A DNA stretch of 63,304 nt from Octopus bimaculoides (GCF_001194135.2 NC_068991.1:1273181-1336484); one strand, 5' to 3'. Counted from the first letter of the stretch, positions 7,031-59,346 are shown. The notes: a model not told the origin generated them from the sequence alone. Numbers and translations: made by a program.

Positions 7031-8054
7031 ATGTTGTTCAAATACACGTCACACCGGTCACTCTTATCTCATTTTTTCCTTTGTATATGTAAGCTNNNNN
7101 NNNNNNNNNNNNNNNNNNNNNNNNNNNNNNNNNNNNNNNNNNNNNNNNNNNNNNNNNNNNNNNNNNNNNNNNNNNNNNNNNNNNNNNNNNNNNNNNNNNN
7201 NNNNNNNNNNNNNNNNNNNNNNNNNNNNNNNNNNNNNNNNNNNNNNNNNNNNNNNNNNNNNNNNNNNNNNNNNNNNNNNNNNNNNNNNNNNNNNNNNNNN
7301 NNNNNNNNNNNNNNNNNNNNNNNNNNNNNNNNNNNNNNNNNNNNNNNNNNNNNNNNNNNNNNNNNNNNNNNNNNNNNNNNNNNNNNNNNNNNNNNNNNNN
7401 NNNNNNNNNNNNNNNNNNNNNNNNNNNNNNNNNNNNNNNNNNNNNNNNNNNNNNNNNNNNNNNNNNNNNNNNNNNNNNNNNNNNNNNNNNNNNNNNNNNN
7501 NNNNNNNNNNNNNNNNNNNNNNNNNNNNNNNNNNNNNNNNNNNNNNNNNNNNNNNNNNNNNNNNNNNNNNNNNNNNNNNNNNNNNNNNNNNNNNNNNNNN
7601 NNNNNNNNNNNNNNNNNNNNNNNNNNNNNNNNNNNNNNNNNNNNNNNNNNNNNNNNNNNNNNNNNNNNNNNNNNNNNNNNNNNNNNNNNNNNNNNNNNNN
7701 NNNNNNNNNNNNNNNNNNNNNNNNNNNNNNNNNNNNNNNNNNNNNNNNNNNNNNNNNNNNNNNNNNNNNNNNNNNNNNNNNNNNNNNNNNNNNNNNNNNN
7801 NNNNNNNNNNNNNNNNNNNNNNNNNNNNNNNNNNNNNNNNNNNNNNNNNNNNNNNNNNNNNNNNNNNNNNNNNNNNNNNNNNNNNNNNNNNNNNNNNNNN
7901 NNNNNNNNNNNNNNNNNNNNNNNNNNNNNNNNNNNATATATATATATATATACATATACATACATGTACATATATGCATTTATGTATGTAGGTGTGTGCG
8001 AAGCAGGAGAGAAATAAAGTAAAAAAGCGTGAGTAGGAGAGGGGAAGGAGGAAA

Positions 8055-8100
<46 letters not shown>

Positions 8101-9002
8101 ACCATTTGATGTGATTTAGTCGATATAAAGGGACTTAAAATATTGTTTAGACTGGGAAACGGTACTGGAGTATGATTGGACACACACGTATGTGTGTATG
8201 TATATATGTGTCTATTTATACATCGATTTTTATGTATGTATGCATATAAATATATATGTATATGCGTGTGTGTGTATATATATATATGTATATATATATA
8301 TTTGGCTGGTGTACTTGTTTGTCAAGTGTCTTAATATGAAGCTGTCCATGGAAAGTGAATCAATTGCATTGTGGAATCGTGGAAGAGTCAGGGCTTTGGT
8401 TAACACGCCCAGGCACACACTTTCATACACATACACACGCATCCATTCGTACCTACCTGCCTACCTGTATAGCTACATACGCACATACATACATACATAC
8501 ATACACACGTAGATACGTAAATATATACATACATATATACATACACATACACACATATATATACATATATATATGTACGTATGTATATATATATATATAT
8601 ATATATATNNNNNNNNNNNNNNNNNNNNNNNNNNNNNNNNNNNNNNNNNNNNNNNNNNNNNNNNNNNNNNNNNNNNNNNNNNNNNNNNNNNNNNNNNNNN
8701 NNNNNNNNNNNNNNNNNNNNNNNNNNNNNNNNNNNNNNNNNNNNNNNNNNNNNNNNNNNNNNNNNNNNNNNNNNNNNNNNNNNNNNNNNNNNNNNNNNNN
8801 NNNNNNNNNNNNNNNNNNNNNNNNNNNNNNNNNNNNNNNNNNNNNNNNNNNNNNNNNNNNNNNNNNNNNNNNNNNNNNNNNNNNNNNNNNNNNNNNNNNN
8901 NNNNNNNNNNNNNNACGGCGATGTAGGAAACAGTGTTGAAATGTGTTTCAGGTGTGTTTACTCAAAGATAGCGCCATGACAGAAGAGGGCGGGCGGGGGA
9001 TT

Positions 9003-9045
<43 letters not shown>

Positions 9046-13720: not shown

Positions 13721-16612
13721 ACAAACACACTGCATGTATGTATCTGTAATATTACATATATGTTTATATACTACACACACACACACACACTACACCATGC
13801 ACATATACAACATACATCCACACACACAAATATGTACGTGATTATAAATTTTAATGCAACTCCAACATCAAACACTCACGCAAACGTGTTCAGACGTAAA
13901 TCACATTTTCTTTTGCTCCCAAAACAAGTATGATGTTGTCAGCATTATGTCTTTTCACAGGAAGTGATACGTTATGAAGCCCCCATGAACTTCCGGAACT
14001 TCTCCTCTCCGTTCCTTATTTTGTTATTTCTACAAGAATATACAGTAGACATATCTACAGAATGGCGAAGGAGATTCCTGAAGCCAGTCTATCGATTTCT
14101 TGGCGATTTCACCCGTGAATATAATCTGGATGGTAAGGTATACACCAAGTTGTACTTGGAAAAATCTTTCCGCTACGTTTGTTTCTTCTTCCACTTCTCC
14201 CTGTGCTCTCCAATTTCCGTTTTATCTGCTTCTTTCTGTCATTGTGTGTGTGTGTGTGTGTGTGTGTGTTTGTTGGTGTACACACACATACGCACACACA
14301 CACACGCACACACACACACGCACACACACACACAAGATTTAAGATATGAGACACAGAAAATGGAATTCACTGGTCTCTTATTCAGAACCACTACGATCGT
14401 TTCGATCATCATGCTCCTGTACCTTACAGGTGAGATGCTATGCAATCAATTGTCATGCATTATATGTGCAGATGCATCTCCTCAGGTAACTTTTCAAAAA
14501 GTATCCCGTTGTTTCTTGCTGTTTCGCTTATTTCTATAACAAAACATTTTGGTTTGTGTAACGTGTCTCCACATTGAAATCGGAGTCTTTCATTCTATAT
14601 GTGTAATTTAATAAATACAGAAGTTGTGGTTGATCTACTTCAAGTTTCATGAGAGAAAAGTACAGTATTTGTCCACGCTTATGTAAAGCGTATCATCTGT
14701 AATCCTTTAAACTTCTGAAGCTTATAAGTCTCAATAATTGCTCGATCACACCCCATACAACCCCCCTTTGAACATGGCCGAATATTCCGCCTTTCAAATT
14801 CGAAATTTGAAGTAGTTCACCCATAACTTCTCTAATTATTAAATGATTTATATAGTCTTGCTGAATTGAGTACTGTTTTCTGATCTTATCCACAAAGTAA
14901 CTTGCCGACTCGGTCAAAAAGAGATGTTGCACTAAATTATATTGCATTGTGTAGCGCGGTTATGATGACCAATGCAGGCCATCAGTGGTTATTTTGGACT
15001 TTAATGTTTAATTTACGACCTATCAACTGGTCGAGTGGCCAACGGTCCGAGTTCTGTTCAGTGCTGTTTCCCACGGCCAAAGCTCTTAAATTAGTTAACG
15101 GCTACAATTTACTTGGCACCAGAGTGACATTGTAAAGGTGACGGATTTTTCGTTAGTTTTTATACAAATGTTCAAGTCTTCTCACAAACTGCGAACCTGG
15201 TGGAGGTGTTATCAATGATACTTCTATTTCAATTCTGCTCAAACCCGCTCAAACACCCATGGGAATTAGAATGATTAAATTAATTCTTATACTTCCGTGA
15301 GTTATTATTTTCATTGGTTCATTCACTCGTTCTTTCTCTCTCGTTATCTCAAGGCCCCGTCGCTGTCAACTGGGCCCTAGTGACAACAGACCTTTATGCA
15401 ACAGAACAAAACCGCATTTCCAATATCGTAGACAACTGTCCACACTACATCGCTACAGGTAAGTAAAACCGAATATATATGTATATATATANNNNNNNNN
15501 NNNNNNNNNNNNNNNNNNNNNNNNNNNNNNNNNNNNNNNNNNNNNNNNNNNNNNNNNNNNNNNNNNNNNNNNNNNNNNNNNNNNNNNNNNNNNNNNNNNN
15601 NNNNNNNNNNNNNNNNNNNNNNNNNNNNNNNNNNNNATATATAATGAAAGCAATGAACATAAAAATAATGAAGGCAACACGGGAGGGGGACAAAAATTCA
15701 ACAAATGTTATATTAGTTTAAAGCTTACAAGGAGGGAAAAGAGCCTTGACGTTTCAACAGTTGGTCCTTCTTCAAAATATAGAAGATAAGTAAATGAGAT
15801 TGAAAAAGAATAAATGGTTGGAGAATAAATACATACATACGTACGTACATACGTTGAAATTCCTATGAAGGAGCTTTGGATCTTGGTTAGAAACCGGCTC
15901 TTTCTCTATTGGCAAAAAATCTTGAATTAAAATTGAATAATGAAAGAAACGGAGTGAGGGAGTGTGAAAGAGAGAGAGAGGGGTGTATGTGTGAAATTTA
16001 CTGCTTCTATCCGACATTTCACCTTCACATTAATGGAATCAGTTCTTGGTGTTAGACTTACTCTTACTCCAACCATTTAGCATTTCTAGTTTGTATACGA
16101 AGTACACACAGCATTATAGAAACTGCAGAAGCTTTAATGACTTCTATATATTTTTGTTTGTCACATTTTCTTCTACCTGACTATAAAAGTGTTTGAACTA
16201 TTTTTTTGTTTCTTACATTTCTTATTCCATAATTTCCCACGTGATGGCAGCACTTGCAAAACACGAACGAACATTTATCCCGCCTAATTTACACCTGTAC
16301 GTCGGTCTTTACGTTTCCTTTACCTCTGAAAGTATTACCTATCAATCTTGCTGCAATGAGTACAAATCCAAGTATGTATATATTTATTATTATTATTATT
16401 ATTTTGCTTTGGTTTTATTCCTGGTAGGATTTATATGGGTAACGGGTTACTCCATGTAACCTTAGGTACACACAAGTTTTCGGCAGCCTTTCAAGTGCTT
16501 AGAACCCTCCTGAAACAAACTTTCCTCAAGAAACAAGCTTTCTCTAGGAGCCCTACTGGGCTTTCTATTTCAATCTCCTTCAGTCATTTGTCTATATCTT
16601 GGCATACTGTTG

Positions 16613-16660
<48 letters not shown>

Positions 16661-18284
16661 GTTATTATTATTCGCCTCTCGCTCCCGCCACCCTCCCTCG
16701 ATCGGGCAGGCAAGGCAGTTTTCCTTTGCCTGCTGGCTGTGGCGAAAGAAGTTGTTTAGTGGACAAGGCTGAAAGGCATGAGGACAGATATATTCTTCAC
16801 ATTAACTTCTTCAAGTTTCACTTGAAAAAGAAATTGAGAGTGGAGAGGGAAGTGTTGCCCTCGAGTGAGTTTATTGAGAGGTGGGTGAAAGTTACGGAAA
16901 TGACAAGGGTGGATGGTACCTCTCTAAGTGTTGACCTGTGAGTCGGAGAGAAGGAATTGGAGAGTGCAGTTGCCCCTGGGGTTTCAGGGAAATCTCGGAC
17001 AGTGGAGTTCCACGATTATCCCTAGAGGCGTTCCTGTATCAGGATGGCCACATCTCTATCATCCTCCCTCCCCCCTTTTTTTTTACCTTTGTATGCTATG
17101 CATATGTCCCTTCTTTTCCAGTCTATACCGTGTATACTCTACTTTTTATTTTTTTATCATTTCATTATTTTATGTAAACCCCACACTTTATGTTGTTTTC
17201 AGTGCTACAGTCGTTTACTTGAATCCTCTGGCAAATGGAACGGCAAAGGCGGTTGATACCCGGTCTGGTGTCCAGCCGAACGCTACAATTAGCTTTGTGC
17301 CTTTTGACCAACACCAAATGGAAGAATTTCGCCGTAAGTAGTTTGTCTCTTCATAATTACACATATAGTAGAATCTCATAATACGTATAACAAATTGATT
17401 AACTTCGAGTAACTGAGAATTGATAGACAAAATCTACCCCCAAGAAATGTTTAAGATCTAAAAACTAACAAATCAAGGGATATAACTCGAATAAGATCAG
17501 TTACTTGAAATTTTTGGACAATATAGATAATCCATATTGGAGTGGAACTGATCTTTAAACCCACCTGATGACAGCAACCGACATTTTCCGATATTATTAT
17601 ACATCGTCAGCAAAAGATAATCCACTCAATTAGCAAAGCTACAAGGGATCGAGATACACACACACGTACATGATTTCTCTGCTGCACCCGGGGTATTGTT
17701 ACACGTAGAATCATTTTACCGGGATATATTTGCTTCAGTAGTTTTAAATGTTTATAGTTCTGAAGTATATGTGCTGATTGGTTTCGGTCGAATTTTTTTT
17801 TGTCATCAAAGAACCAAAATTTGCCAAGTTCGTGAATGCTTTTAAGTTTGTTAAGTAAACATTTGGTCAGTATCAAACAGCTTTCTTGTCTTTCCATACA
17901 TGAACTGGCATCTGTTCATTATACTAGACTTGTATCGAATGCCTTCGTACACTATATTGTCCACGCCGACACCGAATACTTTTTGGAGAAGATCTTCATT
18001 GATTTTCCGGGATCGATAATATTCTGAGCCCTTTGGATGATTCGCGGAGTCATTATAATATCCGAACGTTAAGAAAGTCTTTTCTGTCTTTGATATATTT
18101 AAAGATCTTGTAACATTTAGAAAGTTGGTAATTTCTAAATCACTGTCTTCCGCACATATAGCAGCAATGACTGCTTCGCTTTTCATTTCTTGTGTTTGCA
18201 TTTTATCTGCCATGGGGAATTTGAGAAGAAATAAATAGAAAAATCTTTTAACTGGCTTCAAGTCTCCCCAAATACCCCTTGCGC

Positions 18285-18322
<38 letters not shown>

Positions 18323-20056
18323 TCTTCTTTACGTTCTTTCAGTGATTAGCCATGTACTAAAGGATTATTTCTTCATTTTTCAGATTCTCTTTTCACGCTT
18401 GTTATGGTTGACCCAGACATCCCAGAGGTCTACCACTCGTTGGGTAACTCTACCTACCCACTTATCCATTGGATGACCATTAATATCATTGGCAAGGAGT
18501 TGTCGACTGGTGAGGAGGTACACTCTTATATAGGTCCTCTTCCACCTGACGAAAACCCTCATTTCTATTATTTCATTCTATTGAAGCAACCACGGAGATT
18601 GACAAAAGAAGACCTGGAAGGGTTTTATTCAGACTGTGGGGAGGCGCTTAAAGGAAGGTAAGGCCAATGTCATTTAGAAAGTGCGTGTGTGTGTGGAAGC
18701 GTGCGTGTGTTTTACAAAATGGTAAGATTTAGTATCTTGTGATGTTAGGTCCTTTTATGATCTGATTAAAAAATCTTAGAGAGTCAATAAAAATCTTTTC
18801 GAATGACTGATTTTGTACCAATATTAGAAATCATTCTCAATAACAAAAAAGTAACAGTTAAAGGCAATAAATTAGGAGGGGCAGCTAATCAGCTGAAGTG
18901 ATGCAAAAAGATATTACGATCGACATATTTGTAGCTAAAAATGACACGTGATCATTTGTTCGATCTGAAAGTTACGTTGTCGGAGTGATGGTGAGTACGT
19001 CCAGACACAAAGGCACATAAGCCAGTCGATGGGTCCGGGTGGCGGAAAGATAACGTAGGGACAGAGCCATAATTAGGTGTTCGATAGACAGTGGAAGCGG
19101 GGTACTATTTAATTCCAGGTAGATGTATGTATGTGGTTTCCACTAACGCCTTGTTCAAATATTTGGGTGTAGTGGTGAACTGGAGATCGTGGACTTTAAT
19201 GTCCATTTCGACGGCCTGCCGTGTATTTTAGCAGAGAAAATGGAATGTTGCAACAAACGGCAACAGAAGCTGAGATATTGTCGGTGGTGAGTGGTTGTGT
19301 GAGGTACAAATCGATCGGTTTGGATCGTCTGCTTTCCAAGCCTTAAAGATATACGCCATACTTGTTCCCACCTTTTTTGAAGGATGTCTATCTCACAGGA
19401 AACAGACTAGAATGCATGTCTTATCCCATGACTGCCGTGCCTGGCTCCAGTTTTATCTGATCAGATAGAAACGTTTCTTCTTTCGCTTATTGAGCAAGGA
19501 ATGCGTTCCGTTGATCTAAACGGTAAAAAACGTTGACTTTTGCGAGGAACCTTTTCCTATAGTTTGTCTTTTTGACGGAACCGCAGGTAAAGGCACAATC
19601 TGCAACTTGCGGCAAAAATTACGTTGGTGAATAAAAAAAAAACACAATAAAAATAGCCGAAACACTTTATAATGCTTAATTTGAGGAGATCGAATGTCAG
19701 GTTAGTAAATTCACCATTAGTTTCACAAAGCAACACTTCCTCTGCCGAGTTTTCCGTTTACCATTGAACTGCTTTCATCTTCTGTCTTTAGATGCCTGTT
19801 TCGTATGAGGCAGTTCGTGCAAGCTAAAGATCTGGTGTTTGCTGGTGCCACGTGGATGGCCAGTGAAAACGACAAGTATGTGAGAGCGGTGTATCTTAGG
19901 CAAGGAAGCCCACCCGACCAAGTATGTAAACAGTCCAAATATTATCAACCAGGTTGCCTCGATTCAAGTGAGGCGGTGAGACCCACCTCAGGCTGTGGAA
20001 TAATTTTTGTTTTGTACTATTTCGTTCTTTTATTGATAACGGTTGTAGCTTGTTAA
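7031..20056 (+). CDS. Secreted/GPI-like protein with two tandem PEBP (phosphatidylethanolamine-binding/RKIP)-like domains, 587 aa, 9 coding exons
   Basis: Exons 7031-7088, 10002-10403, 10853-11088, 13961-14132, 15354-15458, 16251-16371, 17203-17333, 18384-18657, 19792-20056. All are GT-AG, phase-compatible and total 1764 nt, open to TAA. N-terminus MLFKYTSHRSLLSHFFLCILFIIIMTTTPTGIA is signal-peptide-like. Domain 2 has the PEBP motifs FTLVMVDPDIP...HWMTINI...YIGPLPP...HFYYFILLKQ. Domain 1 is a degenerate copy (HYTLMFYD...YEAP...FLILLFLQ). C-terminus GIIFVLYYFVLLLITVVAC*. Extra exons inside N-gaps cannot be excluded; exon 1 is the least certain. Confidence 0.85.
11132..11250. repeat. (CTT)n/(CCT)n microsatellite
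   Basis: Trinucleotide run just after exon 3 of the PEBP-like gene. Confidence 0.97.
17560..18262 (-). mobile_element. Tc1/mariner-superfamily (maT/DD37D-like) transposase remnant in an intron of the PEBP-like gene
   Basis: AVIAAICAEDSDLEITNFLNVTRS...IVYEGIRYKSSIMNRCQFM...LLNKLK...FWFFDDKKKFDRNQ, frameshifted. Confidence 0.7.
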
Positions 20057-23758: not shown

Positions 23759-35783
<12,025 letters not shown>

Positions 35784-36297: not shown

Positions 36298-39200
36298 ATG
36301 TCTTTGATTCGGGTTGGAATCTGCGCTGGGATGACGGAGGATGTTGTCCAATCATTGAATACAGCAAATATACGGAACCTTGTGGAGTTTATTGATGCAG
36401 AACTGGAAGAATTAGTTCACACGTCAGGTATATCTTACAAGGTAAGATGAAAGTATAAACACACGTTCGCTTACACACACACGAAGGACCTTCCACACCA
36501 GCACTTAACTTTCTGGAAATAGTGGTCAAATTACCCTGAAAATACATTATATCACCATAAATACATAAAGGACGCCCGCGATAATGTAGTCCTGCTATAC
36601 TTAAAAACACGGGATAATCTTATCTTCCGGTTGTTAAACAACAGCAACAACGTGTTTGGCTGCCTTTACTAGGGTCGTCCTTTATAAATTTCTCTCTGCT
36701 TCTCTCTTTAACTACTTTAGTCTTTTATGGAACCAATTTCGAATTTATAATCTTAACAGATTTGATCACATGTGCATTTCGTTGTTGTGTGGATCCAGGC
36801 CAGATCTAATCGTGTCCCAATCATTTAAAATATTCCGTATTTACTCATTTTGTCTTCTATTCAGACGTGTATCTCGGACTACGTTATTTAACGTCTCCTT
36901 TCTTTTTTTTTTAAATAGACGTTAGTATGTGACTTGAAGAACTTGGCTACCATTTCTAATAGGACTAGCGACCACGAGGATGTGTTCTAATTTACAAAAT
37001 ATAATATGTATTGAATGTATCTTGTTTTATAGCTCTACGTTTATATACACTGATGGATGTATACAATACCATACACTCGGATCATCTCGAAGCAAATTTA
37101 ATTTTCTTTCACATGTGCCACGCCGCAGCACATCAGCAAATAGACTTCACTCTATTTGTATATAAATCCCAGACCAGCGATTCATTTCATTTTGCGATGA
37201 TCCAAGTACATGGTTAATACTTTGAAATGTATTAACTGAGGAAGGTATTGCATAATGGGTTGTATTTCCTATTATATATTACATCGATCTCACATGTGCA
37301 TATTAAATGCTTTCAAAATATCATTATTTGGTTTGACTTCATTGTTACAAGCTGATGTATTAATAGGAAGATAGATATAAGAGGAAACAAGAAAAATAAA
37401 ACAGCATTACTGATTCATATGCTTTTTATATTTCTTTGAATTGGTTACAAGACTGATTGAAGTGCTGAGAGTTTTGTGTATGGCGCTTATCGAATTGCCT
37501 TAAAATCCAAGGGCTTGTGACAGTGTGAATTACATTTAGTTACTAATCTCGTTACAAACAGTATTTTTAATTATTGGAATTTCTGTCTTTGTTCTGCAAT
37601 TATAGGAATTGGTGGCTTTAAGAAGAGTTGTACTTGCTGAATTCTCAGCTTTCCCACTGCAAGCATCAGACATTTATCGAAAACTCATAAAATCAGCAGC
37701 CATCTTGTGTACAGGTTGTGTCAGGTAAATTGTGCATTTCCATAAAACTTCTGAGACTCATTTCCTCTTAGAAGGAAGCTGGCAGTAGTTTCCAGATCTA
37801 CGTGGGTCACTGTCAGACCAGACCAGAGTCCAGCAGTTATTTTAGTTTTGGTGGGTGAGAGGAATTAGCTGATCGGCTTTTATTGAAATAAGGCAGCAAA
37901 CTGGCGGAATTGTTAACAATGCCAGGCAAAAGGCTCAGCGCCGTTTCGTCTGTCTTTATGTTCTGAGTTCAAATTCTGTCAAGTTTGACTTTGCCTCTCA
38001 CCCTTTCAGGTATGGATAGCATATGTACCAGTTGTGTACTGGGGTCAAGGTAATCGACTTACCCCCCACTGCCCCGAAATTGCTGGCCTTGTGCTGTAAT
38101 TTGAAAGCAATGTTTCTTATCTTTGGCAGAATCGTTAGCACGCTGGAGAAAATGCTTAGCAGCAGTTCATCTGTGTCTATGTTTTGAGTTCAAATTCCAC
38201 TGAGGTTGACTCTGCTCTTCACCCTTTCATTAAAATAAGTACCAGTTGAATACTAGGGTTAATGTAACCGACTCAGCCCCTCCCCTTAAATTGCTGGCTT
38301 TGTACCAAAATTTGAAACCAATGTTTCGTCGAAATAAATGGTGGTGGATAGATGTGGGACAAGTTTAGTTGTGGTGAGAGTGACAAGAAGTTGTATAACC
38401 CTAGGTTTGTCTGAATCCAGCAGACCTATGATAAAAGACATTCTATCCATGATCATCTCATCTTTTCAGATATAGTTTATCTCAAACATTATCCAATAGT
38501 GATCCTTTATCTTTATTAAAACAGATGGCTTGAGGTATAATTGGGTGCTACTTCTAGTAGGTAGAACGACCCGTTAAAGGCTCCCTCATGTATAAACATT
38601 CATGATGTGGTTTTGTGTCTGTTTGTAGGTTGGACCAATTACTTGATGGTGGATTATACACAGGAGAAATGACCGAAATTGTTGGTAGCAGTGCTGTTGG
38701 CAAGACACAGGTTGGAACTTCTCTCTGGAGTTGTCTTTTAAGACTCAATCACTCACATTCTGTTTTCAGACCTTCCTTCATGGTGCCTGGCTCTGCATTG
38801 GTTGCAACAATAAGGGTTCCAGTTGATCCGATCAACGGAATAGCCTGCTCGTGAAATTAACGTGCAAGTGGCTGAGCACTCCACAGGCACGTGCACCCTT
38901 AACGTAGTTCTCGGGGATATTCAGTGTGGCACAGAAGGGGGACAAGACTGGTCCCTTTGAATTACTGGTACTTCTCACTTTTAACTGCTGAGTGAACTGA
39001 AGTTACAAGAAATAGTGTCTTGCTCAAGGACACAATATGCTGCCGAGAATTGAACTTACAATCTTATGATCATGAGCCAAATACTCTGACCACTACCTCA
39101 TACACTCACACACACACACACGCATGCGCGCACACGCACACACACAGCATGTACACATTGACACATGTAAATATGTAAAGTAAAAAAACGAATGATGATA

Positions 39201-47722: not shown

Positions 47723-48617
47723 CGTGGTCTGATCAATAAGTATCCTGACTGTTGTTATAGTAATGAAACTAAAGTACACAGAGTGAAGCCACATGGCACA
47801 GATTCTCCTTGAACTCTGCTGTGCACGCGTACTAAGTTGTAACGTTCTAGCTTACTTCCGCTGTTTACAGCAGTGCTTGTAAGGAACGTGTGTAGCGTGT
47901 GATGGTCGCATTGGCCGTGACAGAGAAAGTTGAACAGAGAATCTGCATCAAATTTTGCCAAAAGCTTGGTAATACCTGCTCAGAGGCCTACGCAAAGTTT
48001 TCAAAGTGTTTTCATCGTTCTCAACACAATCAAGGAGATTTTGTGCAACTGAAACCCCAAGTGTTATTTTGGTCAGCTGAAAGCAGTTTTGCCACAAACT
48101 TGGCATTCGTGCGTCTCAAACCCAAATCTTCAGGGATAATGGACTGAACTGAACCGTAACTAATCTGAACATCCTCTAATAACACACGGATAATAATTCG
48201 ACGATTTACCCTCACAGTTGAACGCACATCTGTGATGTTTTTCTGAGTTCTGCTGGAGGCGGCTCTCCCAGAACGTTCATCAATATCGAGATTTTTCGAC
48301 CATCTTGGAAACATCTGAACCACTCGTACACTTGTGTGCGGCTCATACACTCCTCTCCATACACTTTCTGCAACTTTGCGTCGGACTCTAAGCAGGTATC
48401 ACCATGGCAGCTTTCCCTGTCATGGTCAATGCGATGTTCACTCGCTACACACCTCCCTTCGAAGCATTGCTGTAAATAGCGGAAGTGAGCTAGAATATTA
48501 AAACTTTGTGCGCATGCACAGCAGAGTTCAAGGTCAATCTTTGCCAAGAGGCTTCACTCTGTCTGCTTTAGCTTCGTTGCTATGGCAATAGTCAGGATAC
48601 TTATTGATCAGACCTTA
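47723..48617. mobile_element. Non-autonomous mariner derivative with about 270-bp inverted arms (two 5' ends)
   Basis: TIR ggtctgatcaataagtatcctgact at both ends with TA flanks. The + arm encodes EQRICIKFCQKLGNTCSEAY; the - arm encodes LQKVYGEECMSRTQVYEWFRCF..DERSGR..AKFVAKLL. Confidence 0.85.
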
Positions 48618-54758: not shown

Positions 54759-56385
54759 TTGGGTCATCCCATAAATAACGCGGTTTTTACAATTGCACAA
54801 ACTAAGTCCGAGGGGGCGGGATAAATTACCTGCATCAATTTGCTATAAAAGCAGGGAGTAATTTTACCTTGTTCTTAGTTTTTGCCTTATTCGGATCTTT
54901 TTTAAAACGGGGGCCACATTTTTCATTAACGAAACACTTTGAAACTTGGAACACTGGTAGAATGTGTCATATAAAACATCTTTTTCTCTTAGTCTTCTTA
55001 AAAAAAAAAGAAATCCATAAGTTATTCCATGTGAAAGTTGTATTTCTGTAATTTCAACCAATCACTGACGTCCATTCAGCCGATATACATTAAGTGCCGA
55101 CTACATAAACAAACGATTCTGAAACAATTAACCCTAACCGTAGGGTTAGGGTTAAAGCAAANNNNNNNNNNAATAAAACGAAGGTATGGAGATTAAATAC
55201 GCTTTACATCGCTTAATCAGCCAAAGGAGTAAATATAAACAACTGAATACTCGTCAGTGATTGGTTGAAATTATCGAAATAAGACAATTTTTTACATGAA
55301 ATAAATTCGAATACAAAAATATTTTTCTGTTCTATAACACAAAATAGATAAGTATACGAAGTTTGAAAGTCTTTCCGTACCAAAAACACTACGTAAAACA
55401 TTAATGAAAAATGTGGCCCCCGTTTTAAAATAGATCCGTTCCCTTATTCTTAGTGCAAGTTTTGAAGAGTGCAGTTCGATTTTAACAGTTATTTTTCAAA
55501 GCTATAATAGAAGTGACAAATGTGCGCATTTTACTTTATGAGTTCAATAAAAACAACAACGCAACGGAAAGTGCGAGGAATATTAATGCAGTGTATGGGG
55601 ATCGGACGATAAGAGTGAGCCAGTGTCAATGGTGGTTCCAGAAATTCCGATCCGGAAACTACAGCGTAGAAGATGACCCTCTTACTGGAAGACCTGTAGA
55701 GCTCGATGAGGACGTCTTGCAAACCCTGGTGGAACAAAATCCCATCGTAACTGTTGAGGAATTAGCAAAGAAGCTTGGATTTGGTCATTCAATACATTCA
55801 TCGACACCCGCATGCCATTAGAAAAGTCAGCAAATTGGGTCAATGGGTCCCTCACAAATTTTCCAAGTCTAATCGCGTGCAGAGGGTGAATGTGTGCTCT
55901 TCTCTGCTGTCACGTCACACGAATGGACCTTTTTTGCACCGAATAGTGAATGGGTTCTCTATAAAAATGTCAAGCGCCGAAGACAGTGGGTAGGGAAAGG
56001 GAGAAACCCATGTAAGGTGTTGTTATCTGTTTGGTGGGATACGAAAGGTTTAGTCTACTTTCAACTTTTAAAGCCAAATCAAACAATAACAAAAGGAAAA
56101 GATACTGCGAGCAGCTTGAGTGGCNNNNNNNNNNTTCAACTTTTAAAGCCAAATCAAACAATAACAAAAGGAAAAGATACTGCGAGCAGCTTGAGTGGCT
56201 TAAATCAGTGCTAGGAGAAAAACGACCATCTTTGGTTTCGAAACGAAAGGTGCTCTTCCATCAGGATAATGCTCGACCACATAGAGCGAGGATGACATTC
56301 CAAAAGCTGGAGCACCTATCGGACATTGCCCTATCTAATTATCATTTATTTTGCATTCTTCAAAATTATTTGGATGGAAAAACTA
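54759..56385 (+). mobile_element. Degenerate mariner element
   Basis: TA-flanked left TIR ttgggtcatcccataaataacgcggttttt. Transposase motifs LLYEFNK..ATESARNINAVYG..WFQKFRSG..GRP..WVPH..KVLLSVWWD..FHQDNARPH..YHLF, with frameshifts. Right TIR not found. Confidence 0.85.
54892..55438. mobile_element. MITE nested in the mariner 5' region
   Basis: About 38-bp TIRs cggatcttttttaaaacgggggccacatttttcattaa / ttaatgaaaaatgtggcccccgttttaaaatagatccg. ccttatt occurs on both flanks (possible TSD, offset by 3 nt). Confidence 0.75.
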
Positions 56386-57238
56386 TTGTACTTGCTCCAT
56401 TCTTCGTCGCCAGTAAAGAAAGAACATATATGATGCATTCCAAGATCTCTGTGTTGCCATGTAAACGGCCGGTTCACGCTATACGAATTGCCTTCATTTA
56501 AAAAATGCTTCCGTTTTCTAAGTTAGTTTTCAAAACAGATTTAAAGTCCATTTGTATTCTAACATTTAACCTAGGGTCATTTTCTTTGGTTCATCCATTT
56601 TTGTACCGAAATTAATTATTCCAGAAGTCTGAAAGAAAGAGACACTGAAAACAAATAAACTAAACAAAGTCTTAATTAAGGAGTTTTGTTCCTTTGGCTG
56701 ATGAACTTTTTGTAATTTGTTAATATTTATTACGTATTTTAATGTCAGCGTTGTTATGGGAACTTTCTTCCTTTGTCTCTATATTAAACGGTATGAATTA
56801 TTTTAGTAAAAGAAGTTGTTTTTAATGATTCGCAAACAAAAATAAATCAACAGCGTTTATGTTTATCTCTTTATCGTTTGTTCGGCTGATTTGAAACCTC
56901 AGCAACAGATGTCGGTCTCAAGAAGTCGACAGACATTTTACAAATGTTTAATGGTGGAAATCTAATTCGATTTTATGAGTTGATAATTTTATGAGGTAAT
57001 TATTGATTGAAAGACGCATAAAACAGAAACGAATGAAGTCGAAATGGAATAAAGTCGGAGTATTTTTGTATTCTTTAGTTGTTTTGTATGTATTTCTTTG
57101 GTTCTTTGGTTCTATGGGCAGTGGTTTTTGTTGTTTGACTCCAGATCAATCCTATTTGCAGAAATGTCGAGTGGTGGCAGCCATATAATCAAATGCAGTT
57201 CCACCCATGACTATTCTGTGTTTATTCAGACTAATTTC

Positions 57239-57400: not shown

Positions 57401-59346
57401 AAGAAATTATCCATTTTCTTTTTTTTTCTTCTCTTTTTTTATTCCTCTCTTCCTGTTTTCGATTTGACTTTACTAATACATTCCCTACTTTGAGGTCACT
57501 TTAAATAAAACCCTTGATTCAATAACACTGTGTACAGTTGGTCATAAAATAGTGAAGAGAAGAAAGAGATACGATTGAGACGGAAACACCTCGAACTAAT
57601 CACTGATATTGGTTAGAATTTTTCGGCACCATGCCAGCTGTTTCGAGGGAGGGAAAAAGTTGATTATATCCACCCCTGCGATCAACTGGTTCCTATTGTG
57701 TCGTCTCGGAAGAGATGCTAAGCAAAGTCGACCTCGGTGGGATTTGAACTCAGAACATAAAGAAGGACGAAATGCCGATAAGCATTTCCCCCCGTCGTGC
57801 TAAACATTCTGCCAGTTCGCCGCCTTAAATAGATCATTGATGCTAAGAGGGAGACAGTGGGCAAAGAAACGTTGCTTTTGGGGCGGACATAACTGAGGTA
57901 ACTTAATGTGGAATAGAAAATCAGCGCTGCAAAGAATACCTGGAACCTTTGAATCGCAGCATCACATTTTCTACATACATAATGATGAAGGACATATACA
58001 GAGTTAACATTTTCGAGAAAAACGAATCTATTTAAAAACGTAATGGTTTCACACACGATTTTCACTGATTAATTCTGACAAAACAGGAATAAGCTTAGAC
58101 TCATTTTAAATAAAATACACGGATTTTATAATGACTCTGTGTTCGTAGTGTTTGTATGTATGTGTGTGTATGTATGTGTGTGTATGTATGTGTGTGTATG
58201 TATGTGTGTGTATGTACGCACGTATGCATGCATGTATGTATTTATGTATGTGTGTGTGTATGTGCGTATATACGCACGTATGTATGTGTGTATGTATGTA
58301 TGTATATATGCATGCATGCATGTATGTTTTTATGTAGGTATGTATGCATGTACGTGTGTATGTGTGCATGCATGTATGTATGTGTGTATGTATGCATGTA
58401 CGTATATGTTATGTATACATGCACGTATGTGTGTATATATGCATGTTTTCTGTTTTTAATTAAATTCGTCCTCTGAGGAAGGAAGGCATGTATGTATGTA
58501 TGTATGTGTGTGTGTCTATATATGCATGTATGCATAAATATATGTATAATATACAAATATATATATGTATCTATATATAAATAAATGTGTGTTTGTGTGC
58601 ATGTATGTATACACATTTATTTATAAATATGTTTTATAAACTACATATTTTGTATGATACTTTTGGAAGTTAACATAAATAAAACTCTATATTGATTATG
58701 GATTAACTAGGAGACACACCTGTAATTAATCGATACTGGTATATCTTAATTGAAGATATTATGGAACCTCATTAAAAGAGAGAACCAATCAATATTGAGG
58801 AATCGTCGTGTTCTTGTTGCTGTTGTTTTTATCAGGTTATGCTTCTTCTTACCGATTGTCAAAGGCGTTCCTGAAGTGACCATACCCTCTTTCTTTAAAT
58901 CCTTTTCAGTAAATCTTCTTCTTCTTCTAAGCACTCGGCCCTTTAAAAGAGTAATCCCCCATCTCGCTAAACCGTACCCTACCGGCCAACAAGCAGTGCC
59001 CATACATCGTGTGTGGCGGAGAATATTTACAACACTATCGTAGCTTCCAGTTTATATTTGAATTTACTCTTACGTATGCACCGTCGTGTCACACCAGCAA
59101 ATGCTTTTCACACTTTGCATAGAGTCATAAACTAGAATCGCCTCCGACTCGTTTAGATTAGTTGATGCTAATAATCTACAAAAATGGCGAATCATCGATG
59201 CGCATTGCTCTTGAATGGGATTAAGGGTGAGTTGTCTTGCTTGTCTATGAATTTCAAGTGTTTCAACACCCGGCACTTTGAGGGAGTCATTACCACCGCT
59301 CAAACCAACATCGGTTGTCAAACAGACACGAAGACACGCACACATG

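What the first reader, a model, noticed from the sequence alone, without database searches (positions are those of the whole stretch)
7031..20056. Cell-surface (signal peptide + GPI-like tail) protein built from two tandem PEBP/RKIP domains
Seen: a 587-aa model with an N-terminal signal peptide, a Ser/Pro/Thr linker, an internal duplication (YLNVSYRSPQGQYKACANRYK...VNP versus LYVSFTSESITYQSCCNEYK...LNP; DLYATEQ..DNCPHY versus DKYVRAV..QVCKQSKY), 7 N-glycosylation sequons (NTT, NVS, NFS, NAT, NGT, NAT, NST), about 12 Cys in the mature region, and a terminal 17-20-residue hydrophobic stretch with no cytosolic tail after D-S-S. Established: typical PEBPs (RKIP/PEBP1, TFS1, FT) are about 20-kDa single-domain cytosolic proteins; secreted ones such as PEBP4, Drosophila antennal A5 and OV-16 are single-domain. 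Inference: an outward-facing, membrane-tethered double PEBP could act as a lipid, odorant or ligand-capturing co-receptor or an extracellular protease inhibitor. It may belong to an uncharacterised invertebrate tandem-PEBP group (I recall nematode C56G2.4-like annotations, unverified).
Basis: partly seen in the sequence, partly recalled or inferred. Interest (0 to 1): 0.75.

Follow-up and report, generated by a model that had tools for sequence, protein, structure and literature searches.

The report
Membrane-tethered double-PEBP surface protein gene
This octopus gene encodes a secreted, probably GPI-tethered glycoprotein made of a new cysteine-rich head, a degenerate PEBP domain and an intact PEBP domain.

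Summary
Every assembly gap lies in an intron. Exons 2-9 (residues 20-587) have length-matched counterparts in the gap-free Octopus sinensis locus at 86-97% nucleotide identity. A spliced transcript from another species aligns with no insertion at any junction. The orthologous first exon maps into the gap at 5576-6350, outside the finding.

Domain 2 is a canonical PEBP (Pfam PBP E 2e-11; DPDIP, HW, GPLPP and H-x-Y kept). Domain 1 matches nothing as a single sequence. Its family profile hits solved PEBPs at E 3e-17 and matches domain 2 at 99.95% probability. A high-confidence AlphaFold model matches only PEBP structures.

About 50 full-length relatives exist in molluscs, an annelid, nematodes and tardigrades. 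All are unnamed or called 'C56G2.4-like'. Nearly all have a hydrophobic N-terminus and a terminal hydrophobic tail, and 11 of the 12 ectodomain cysteines are invariant or nearly so. GPI anchoring and function remain inferred. This is a solid new variant of a known fold, of moderate interest.

The parts
5576..6350 (+). Assembly gap that most likely hides the true first coding exon. This would be the ortholog of O. sinensis MNEQRWTYKFIFRVF, which carries the start codon and the first half of the signal peptide.
   Evidence: Flanking synteny: L001 8515-9406 matches window 4302-5248, and L001 10227-10543 matches window 6373-6636. O. sinensis exon 1 lies at L001 10001-10046. No match to it exists in the readable window.
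7031..7088 (+). It is probably spurious.
   Evidence: It is phase-compatible. It has no O. sinensis counterpart and is one of 199 equivalent candidates upstream. Its donor lies 7 nt from the gap.
10002..10403 (+). Exon 2. It encodes the end of the signal-peptide hydrophobic core (FIIIMTTT), the Ser/Pro/Thr linker (~10040-10108), the 4-Cys 'FWFG' module (~10109-10339) and the start of PEBP-like domain 1.
   Evidence: Acceptor and donor sites and phase. It is 86% identical to L001 16253-16666, with indels only in the Ser/Thr-rich stretches. The module is conserved across the family.
10853..11088 (+). Exon 3. It encodes the core of domain 1, including the degenerate pocket motif YTLMFYDSSNSNVKGLYTNI.
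   Evidence: It is 94% identical to L001 with the same length.
13961..14132 (+). Exon 4. It encodes the domain 1 stretch 'YEAPMNFRNFSSPFLILLFLQ', which corresponds to Y-x-GP...H-x-Y-x-F-L-x-x-Q of PEBPs.
15354..15458 (+). Exon 5. It encodes the C-terminal part of domain 1 (GPVAVNW..DLYATE..NCPHY).
   Evidence: D302 and C318 are invariant in the family.
16251..16371 (+). Exon 6. It encodes the inter-domain helix and the start of domain 2 (LYVSFTSESITYQSCC).
   Evidence: The CC pair is invariant.
17203..17333 (+). Exon 7. It encodes the N-terminal strands of domain 2 (NATVVYLNPLANGT...).
18384..18657 (+). Exon 8. It encodes the canonical PEBP core of domain 2: DPDIP (18410-18424), HW, GPLPP and PHFYYF.
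   Evidence: Pfam PBP E 2e-11 at aa 408-481. Alignment to Tm16 and CG7054.
19792..20056 (+). Exon 9. It encodes the end of domain 2 (to ~19960), a candidate omega region D-S-S, the spacer EAVRPTSG, a 20-residue hydrophobic tail (19961-20053) and the stop codon (20054-20056).
   Evidence: The tail keeps its hydrophobic character but not its sequence in orthologs. The same holds across the family.

Best explanation
The locus is the octopus ortholog of a conserved family of extracellular proteins sampled so far only in protostomes. RefSeq labels its members 'uncharacterized protein C56G2.4-like'.

The protein enters the secretory pathway through an N-terminal signal peptide.

The mature protein consists of:
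- a short Ser/Thr/Pro linker;
- a 4-cysteine helical 'FWFG' module with no known relative;
- a PEBP-fold domain that has lost the anion-pocket motifs (a pseudo-PEBP serving as scaffold);
- a second PEBP domain that keeps the full pocket signature (DPDIP, HW, GPLPP, H-x-Y, D-x-Y).

Six disulfides' worth of conserved cysteines stabilise it.

A terminal hydrophobic peptide, preceded by small residues (D-S-S) and an 8-residue spacer, is most likely exchanged for a GPI anchor. That would leave the protein on the outer face of the plasma membrane.

Most likely mechanism (inferred): a surface-tethered binding protein. The pocket of domain 2 would capture an anionic group, such as a phosphoryl- or sulfo-bearing lipid head group or a modified partner. 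Domain 1 and the N-module would provide a rigid platform or a partner-binding face.

Shown: gene structure, homology of both domains, the family, the conserved cysteines, the hydrophobic termini and purifying selection.

Inferred: signal cleavage, GPI attachment and ligand binding.
For: Gene structure:
- The model has 9 exons in consistent phase.
- Exons 2-9 are orthologous to O. sinensis and match the RefSeq protein at 91% identity.
- A spliced transcript-derived homolog aligns without junction insertions.

Selection:
- dN/dS against O. sinensis is 0.18 overall, 0.16 for domain 1 and 0.13 for domain 2.

Domain 2:
- Pfam PBP 44.8 bits against a cut-off of 24.
- phmmer against the PDB gives Tm16 at 3.7e-9 and CG7054 at 2.8e-7, with the DPDxP, HW, GPxPP, H-x-Y and D-x-Y columns aligned.

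Domain 1:
- The family profile hits Tm16 at 3.3e-17 and PEBP1 at ~1e-14.
- hhalign of domain 1 against domain 2 gives 99.95% probability, E 8e-37, over 187 columns.

Structure:
- The AlphaFold2 model has pLDDT 87.2 and pTM 0.77.
- All 48 Foldseek PDB hits at E<=1e-3 are PEBP-fold proteins.

Family:
- 46 representatives at E<=1e-30, most matching the whole profile in one stretch.
- They come from molluscs, an annelid, nematodes and tardigrades.

Extracellular topology:
- Hydrophobic N-termini and C-terminal tails occur in nearly all full-length members.
- 11 of 12 ectodomain Cys are invariant or nearly so across 34 members.
- Sequons are enriched across the family, 229 against 161 expected.
- Oyster members carry an N-terminal Frizzled CRD, an exclusively extracellular domain.
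Against: - No signal-peptide or GPI predictor was available; the calls rest on hydropathy and inspection.
- The window itself does not show the first exon.
- Several family members (for example P0009, P0011, P0024 and P0034) have 4-15 residues, some of them basic, after the hydrophobic segment. That fits a transmembrane anchor better than GPI, so the mode of tethering may vary.
- The domain 2 pocket motifs are lost in nematode members and in many gastropod paralogs. Pocket-mediated binding therefore cannot be the universal function of the family.
- No expression or biochemical data exist for any member in the searched literature.
Confidence: 0.62

Rival explanations
1. Same protein and topology, but it acts as a membrane-tethered extracellular protease inhibitor. 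It would use the PEBP surface the way yeast Tfs1 blocks carboxypeptidase Y and mammalian PEBP1 inhibits some serine proteases.
For: The carboxypeptidase Y inhibitor (1wpx_B) is among the structural matches, E 1.5e-8. PEBPs acting as protease inhibitors is established knowledge. The extracellular location fits.
Against: There is no specific similarity to Tfs1 beyond the shared fold. Tfs1 ranks below PEBP1, Tm16 and FT by sequence. No protease gene is linked in the window.
Confidence: 0.15
2. Same ectodomain, but it is held by a C-terminal single-pass transmembrane helix, or shed after cleavage, rather than by a GPI anchor.
For: Some relatives have short, partly basic tails after the hydrophobic segment. 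AlphaFold models residues 567-586 as a helix.
Against: In the octopods the hydrophobic stretch runs to the last residue with no cytosolic residues. It is preceded by small residues and a disordered 8-10 residue spacer (pLDDT below 50 at 558-567). Its sequence is poorly conserved while its hydrophobicity is kept, and its dN/dS is 0.54. This is the usual pattern for a removed GPI signal.
Confidence: 0.2
3. The two-domain protein is an annotation artefact: two neighbouring single-domain PEBP genes merged into one model.
For: Merged models do occur in this family: Mercenaria P0005 (950 aa) and Littorina P0155 (1004 aa) hold two whole copies. The window has many gaps.
Against: A 2458-nt transcript contig encodes both domains in one open frame. 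About 50 representatives from four phyla match the full two-domain profile in a single stretch. Exon phases are continuous across the domain boundary. Domain 1 has no start or signal of its own, and domain 2 has none either.
Confidence: 0.02
4. A cytosolic PEBP-like signalling regulator, as RKIP is. The hydrophobic ends would be coincidental or artefacts of the model.
For: Most characterised PEBPs are cytosolic (established knowledge). The window lacks a verified signal-peptide exon.
Against: Twelve ectodomain cysteines are conserved across four phyla. Hydrophobic N- and C-termini are family-wide. Sequons are enriched. Oyster members carry a Frizzled CRD fusion.
Confidence: 0.03

Closest known systems
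C. elegans C56G2.4 and the RefSeq 'uncharacterized protein C56G2.4-like' proteins (O. sinensis XP protein P0001, Babylonia, Haliotis, Physella, Paramacrobiotus)
   Same: Same full-length architecture: signal-like N-terminus, 4-Cys FWFG module, two PEBP-like domains and a hydrophobic C-terminus. The window protein is 91% identical to the O. sinensis member.
   Different: Nothing is known about the function of any member. Nematode members have also lost the pocket motifs in domain 2. C56G2.4 itself was not fetched here; the link rests on RefSeq's naming and on nematode members found by the profile.
PEBP1/RKIP (PDB 1beh, 1bd9, 6ens)
   Same: Both domains share the fold. Domain 2 keeps DPDxP, the pocket His (HW), GPxPP, H-x-Y and the C-terminal D-x-Y.
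   Different: PEBP1 is a cytosolic single domain of about 187 aa with no conserved disulfides. It acts on Raf and GRK2. This protein is extracellular, tandem, disulfide-rich, glycosylated and tethered.
Secreted nematode PEBPs: Trichuris muris Tm16 (PDB 5tvd), Onchocerca Ov-16, Toxocara TES-26
   Same: Tm16 is the best sequence match to both domains (E 3.3e-17 with the domain 1 profile, E 3.7e-9 with domain 2). These are extracellular PEBPs of invertebrates.
   Different: They have a single PEBP domain, are soluble, and lack a membrane anchor and the FWFG module.
Drosophila CG7054 / antennal protein A5 group and human PEBP4
   Same: They are PEBPs with secretory signals. CG7054 (2jyz) matches domain 2 at E 2.8e-7. 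One Haliotis fragment of this family is auto-named 'putative odorant-binding protein A5'.
   Different: They are single-domain, have no GPI-like tail and have no pseudo-domain.
Mitoribosomal mL38 (MRPL38 / yeast MrpL35)
   Same: A PEBP-like domain embedded in a larger protein and used as a structural, non-catalytic module. It gives top Foldseek hits.
   Different: It is a mitochondrial matrix ribosomal protein with one PEBP-like domain, and its context is unrelated.

Membership tests
PEBP superfamily (Pfam PF01161 PBP), domain 2 | Sequence match to the PBP model above the gathering score | tested here: met
   44.8 bits against a cut-off of 24, E 2e-11, aa 408-481. The PDB hits are Tm16, CG7054, TFL1 and PEBP1.
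PEBP superfamily, domain 2 | Anion-pocket signature: DPDxP, the pocket His (HW), GPxPP, H-x-Y (the GxHR region) and the C-terminal D-x-Y | tested here: met
   DPDIP, HW, GPLPP, PHFYYF and NDKYV align with the corresponding Tm16 and CG7054 columns. The Arg of the GxHR motif is Phe. The motifs are conserved in cephalopods, bivalves and the annelid.
PEBP superfamily, domain 1 | Detectable homology to PEBPs | tested here: met
   The single sequence fails: no Pfam hit at E<=10 and no PDB hit at E<=10. The 23-sequence family profile hits Tm16 at 3.3e-17 and PEBP1 at ~1e-14. hhalign against domain 2 gives 99.95%.
PEBP superfamily, domain 1 | Anion-pocket signature | tested here: not met
   YDSSNS replaces DPDxP. 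K-G replaces the pocket His; the family consensus there is HG. YEAPMNF...SPFLILLF has no H-x-Y. Domain 1 is a pseudo-PEBP.
PEBP fold (structure) | The predicted structure matches solved PEBP structures | tested here: met
   The model of the O. sinensis ortholog has pLDDT 87.2 and pTM 0.77. All 48 hits at E<=1e-3 are PEBP-fold proteins, with target TM-scores of 0.63-0.80 for single-domain PEBPs. The tool does not report which query domain was aligned.
C56G2.4-like tandem-PEBP family | One continuous match over the N-module, domain 1 and domain 2; the conserved cysteine pattern; the FWFG motif | tested here: met
   The profile search gave about 50 representatives of 480-630 aa matched in one stretch. 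11 of 12 Cys are invariant or nearly so, and W76, F77 and G78 are conserved.
GPI-anchored proteins | N-terminal cleavable signal peptide | tested here: inconclusive
   The window's first exon is unverified and probably lies in a gap. The O. sinensis ortholog and nearly all full-length relatives have a hydrophobic N-terminus followed by small residues. SignalP was not available.
GPI-anchored proteins | C-terminal signal: small omega to omega+2 residues, a polar spacer of 5-10 residues, and a hydrophobic stretch of 15-20 residues ending the protein | tested here: met
   D-S-S, then EAVRPTSG, then a 20-residue hydrophobic stretch up to the stop codon. The same layout occurs in orthologs and in most of the family. 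This was judged by inspection and hydropathy only.
GPI-anchored proteins | Actual GPI attachment (PI-PLC release, omega-site mass spectrometry) | not testable with these tools
   This needs bench work, or at least NetGPI or PredGPI.

The most novel reading that the evidence does not exclude
The C56G2.4-like proteins are an undescribed class of cell-surface receptors or co-receptors. Each would combine a new 4-Cys module, a pseudo-PEBP scaffold and a ligand-competent PEBP pocket facing the extracellular space. They would capture an anionic lipid or a phospho- or sulfo-modified ligand. The oyster Frizzled-CRD fusion hints at lipid-modified signalling ligands.
Probability: 0.3. Interest if true: 0.6.

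Novelty: new variant of a known kind. Interest (0 to 1): 0.42.

Why it matters
PEBPs are studied almost entirely as small cytosolic regulators (RKIP, florigen FT) or as soluble secreted antigens of parasites. A disulfide-rich, membrane-tethered, two-domain form would extend the fold to the cell surface. It pairs an intact pocket with a pocket-less copy, and every organism identified for it here is a mollusc, an annelid, a nematode or a tardigrade. It would also give a natural pair for asking what the PEBP pocket does outside the cell. The family includes a C. elegans gene and members in parasitic nematodes, so the function can be tested genetically. For the genome annotation, the practical point is that the 5' end of this gene lies in an assembly gap.

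Tried and rejected
- Pairwise BLASTP of domain 1 against domain 2 gave only E 0.004 over 23 aa. That is too weak on its own, so I replaced it with a profile-profile comparison.
- Pfam and phmmer on domain 1 alone found nothing.
- The first AlphaFold run, with a 3-sequence alignment, was useless at pLDDT 32. The 34-sequence alignment fixed it.
- A second word-indexed homolog search with the family alignment returned only 5 proteins and added nothing.
- A search of the window for the O. sinensis first exon found nothing. The O. vulgaris model's N-terminus (MGREGLDSRD) resembles window 4598-4627, but that model is truncated and mis-spliced elsewhere, so I did not adopt it.
- Literature searches for C56G2.4, tandem or double PEBP, locus identifiers, and PEBP with GPI in molluscs found nothing relevant.
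- Rfam and tRNA scans of the window found nothing.
- tblastn found no paralog elsewhere in the window.
- The N-terminal module profile has no PDB relative; the best E is 0.42.
- I rejected the merged-gene artefact and the cytosolic reading; see the rival explanations.

Full report
**What the window is.** The window is AT-rich eukaryotic DNA (GC 0.377) with 16 runs of N. Non-coding stretches are 70-92% identical and coding exons 86-97% identical to one region of the Octopus sinensis chromosome record CM016869.1. The synonymous divergence is 0.146. It therefore comes from an Octopus species close to, but distinct from, O. sinensis. Which species is an inference I could not test.

**Checking the observation.** Reading the three forward frames and the splice signals, I rebuilt a nine-exon model. 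Every junction is GT-AG and every phase is consistent. The seven sequons, the 12 cysteines of the mature part, the Ser/Pro/Thr linker and the 20-residue hydrophobic C-terminus running to the stop codon are all present.

**The gap test.** All six N runs inside the finding lie in introns of the model.
- Exons 3-9 have the same length as their counterparts in the gap-free O. sinensis locus, at 93-97% nucleotide identity.
- Exon 2 is 86% identical and differs only by indels in its Ser/Thr-rich stretches.
- The protein P0004 is encoded as one open frame on a 2458-nt Logan contig from run SRR6517992. That contig is spliced at every internal junction but keeps intron sequence at its 5' end.
- P0004 aligns to the model with no insertion at any exon junction.

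The gaps in introns 2, 3 and 5 therefore hide intron sequence, not coding exons.

**Exon 1 is the weak point.**
- The O. sinensis RefSeq protein (587 aa, 91% identical) starts MNEQRWTYKFIFRVF. That first exon lies 6.2 kb upstream of exon 2.
- This sequence is not in the readable window.
- The flanking alignments are L001 8515-9406 with window 4302-5248, and L001 10227-10543 with window 6373-6636. They place the exon inside the gap at 5576-6350, outside the finding's coordinates.
The alignment stops at 6975.
- It is one of 199 ATG...phase-1 GTR mini-exons in the readable 10 kb upstream of exon 2. Of these, 152 give an equally hydrophobic junction with the FIIIM that opens exon 2.

The conclusion that there is a signal peptide survives only through the ortholog and the family.

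**What the protein is: domain 2.** Domain 2 (about aa 326-556) is a canonical PEBP.
- Pfam PBP scores 44.8 bits against a gathering score of 24.
- phmmer finds the solved PEBPs Tm16 (3.7e-9), Drosophila CG7054, TFL1/CEN and PEBP1.
- DPDIP, HW, GPLPP, PHFYYF and NDKYV sit in the columns of the pocket residues.

**What the protein is: domain 1.** Domain 1 (about aa 133-325) finds nothing as a single sequence, either in Pfam at E<=10 or in the PDB at E<=10. It resembles domain 2 only weakly by BLASTP. The family resolves this.
- A profile of the octopod and SRR6517992 proteins, searched against 1.84 billion representatives, found 895 proteins at E<=1e-3 and 46 at E<=1e-30.
- About 50 proteins of 480-630 aa matched the whole profile in one stretch.
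- From a 34-sequence alignment, the domain 1 columns match the domain 2 columns by hhalign at 99.95% probability, E 8e-37, over 187 columns.
- A domain-1-only profile hits Tm16 at 3.3e-17, PEBP1 at about 1e-14 and mL38 at about 5e-9.
- With the 34-sequence alignment, AlphaFold2 models the O. sinensis ortholog at pLDDT 87.2 and pTM 0.77. Low confidence is confined to the linker, one loop and the pre-tail spacer.
- All 48 Foldseek PDB matches at E<=1e-3 are PEBP-fold proteins.

The internal duplication is real and old. Intron positions are not shared between the two halves.

Domain 1 has lost the pocket. The family consensus reads D-(V/A)-G...H-G, and the octopus reads YDSSNSNVKGLY. The H-x-Y motif is absent. 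Domain 1 is nevertheless under constraint: dN/dS is 0.16 against 0.13 for domain 2, and it is 47% identical to the SRR6517992 homolog against 57% for domain 2.

**The N-terminal module.** A conserved module of about 80 residues with 4 cysteines and an FWFG motif precedes domain 1. It has no Pfam or PDB relative.

**Who has the family.** Names were available for about 25 of the 30 representatives I looked up; the others come only from unnamed Logan assemblies.
- Mollusca: Mercenaria, Pecten, Ostrea, Saccostrea, Potamilus, Lottia, Littorina, Haliotis, Babylonia, Lymnaea, Physella, Bradybaena, Aplysia, Octopus and Argonauta.
- Annelida: Owenia.
- Nematoda: Trichuris, Parascaris/Ascaris, Ditylenchus, Bursaphelenchus, Steinernema, Gnathostoma, Thelazia and Pristionchus.
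- Tardigrada: Ramazzottius and Paramacrobiotus.

Every named one is 'uncharacterized', 'hypothetical', 'C56G2.4-like' or carries an automatic name (usually 'Phosphatidylethanolamine-binding protein'). No arthropod or deuterostome was among those sampled. Four literature searches found no paper on the family or on animal tandem PEBPs.

**Topology.**
- Nearly all full-length members have a hydrophobic N-terminus, often followed by a classic small-x-small site just before the first conserved Cys.
- Nearly all also have a hydrophobic C-terminal segment with 0-11 residues after it, mostly 5 or fewer.
- Of the 12 ectodomain cysteines, 11 are invariant or nearly so in 34 sequences from four phyla, and the twelfth is present in 24 of 32. 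This argues for six disulfides and so for an oxidising compartment.
- Sequons are 1.4-fold enriched across the family, although 7 against 4.7 expected is not significant for the octopus protein alone.
- Two Saccostrea species carry an N-terminal Frizzled cysteine-rich domain (Pfam Fz, E 1.4e-20) fused to the same body. That domain is only found outside the cell.
- The octopus tail conserves hydrophobicity but not sequence: 81%, 31% and 3% identity in the three cephalopod homologs, with dN/dS 0.54.
- The tail is preceded by D-S-S and an 8-residue spacer that AlphaFold leaves disordered. This is the usual signature of a removed GPI signal.
- Some relatives have short, partly basic tails that would suit a transmembrane anchor instead, so tethering is firmer than GPI specifically.

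**How it most likely works.** My best reading is a GPI-tethered surface glycoprotein. The intact pocket of domain 2 would bind an anionic group on a lipid or a modified partner. The pseudo-PEBP domain and the FWFG module would form a rigid platform. Nematode members and many gastropod paralogs have also lost the domain 2 motifs. The family-wide function may therefore be protein binding or scaffolding, with pocket binding retained in the slowly evolving clade to which the octopus gene belongs. The protease-inhibitor reading, the transmembrane-anchor reading, the merged-gene artefact and the cytosolic reading are weighed in the rival explanations. The last two are effectively excluded.

**Verdict.** Three corrections apply.
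- The first exon is wrong, and the true one lies in a gap outside the stated coordinates.
- Domain 1 is a pocket-less pseudo-domain recognisable only with a family profile.
- There is an additional undescribed N-terminal module.

The sequences are already in public databases under uninformative names, and the O. sinensis ortholog is annotated. This is therefore not a new gene. It is an undescribed variant of a well-known fold, of moderate interest.

Noticed in passing
window 55513-55821 (+), 56031-56501 (+), 48030-48547 (-): Remnants of Mos1/mariner-type transposases. The HTH_48 domain scores E 2.4e-18 on the + strand copy and 7.8e-6 on the - strand copy. The + strand copy is interrupted by 10-N gaps and frame breaks.
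   Followed up: partly
window ~27219-28911 (-): Exons of a pyridine-nucleotide disulphide oxidoreductase. The motif [21 protein letters not shown] looks like thioredoxin reductase. The Pfam Pyr_redox hit is weak (E 0.0044). O. sinensis has the same downstream neighbour on the same strand (L001 35556-41021).
   Followed up: partly
window 2810-2945, 33479-33640, 37890-38320, 57650-57830; L001 several copies: A dispersed SINE-like repeat of about 130-200 nt, shared with the O. sinensis locus at 72-92% identity.
   Followed up: no
P0021 / P0165 (Saccostrea echinata, S. cucullata): A Frizzled cysteine-rich domain (Pfam Fz, E 1.4e-20) is fused to the N-terminus of the tandem-PEBP body in two oyster species. 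This could be a clue to function, or a merged gene model.
   Followed up: partly
P0005 (Mercenaria, 950 aa), P0155 (Littorina, 1004 aa), Bradybaena BsWGS_07125-07127: The family forms tandem gene arrays in some molluscs. Two database models contain two complete copies (four PEBP-like domains) each and are probably merged neighbours.
   Followed up: no
window 10109-10339 (aa 56-132): A conserved 4-cysteine helical module with an FWFG motif. It has no Pfam hit in 34 members and no PDB relative (best E 0.42). It appears to be an undescribed domain.
   Followed up: partly
window 10040-10108: The Ser/Pro/Thr linker is encoded by an imperfect TCA/TCN microsatellite. Its length differs between species (5 residues against O. 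sinensis here, plus a further 9-residue Thr-rich indel later in exon 2). It is absent from the non-cephalopod relatives.
   Followed up: no
window 4598-4627 (+): The peptide MGHEGLDSCD resembles the N-terminus (MGREGLDSRD) of the O. vulgaris gene model P0002. This may be an alternative or spurious upstream first exon conserved between species. That O. vulgaris model is otherwise truncated and mis-spliced.
   Followed up: no
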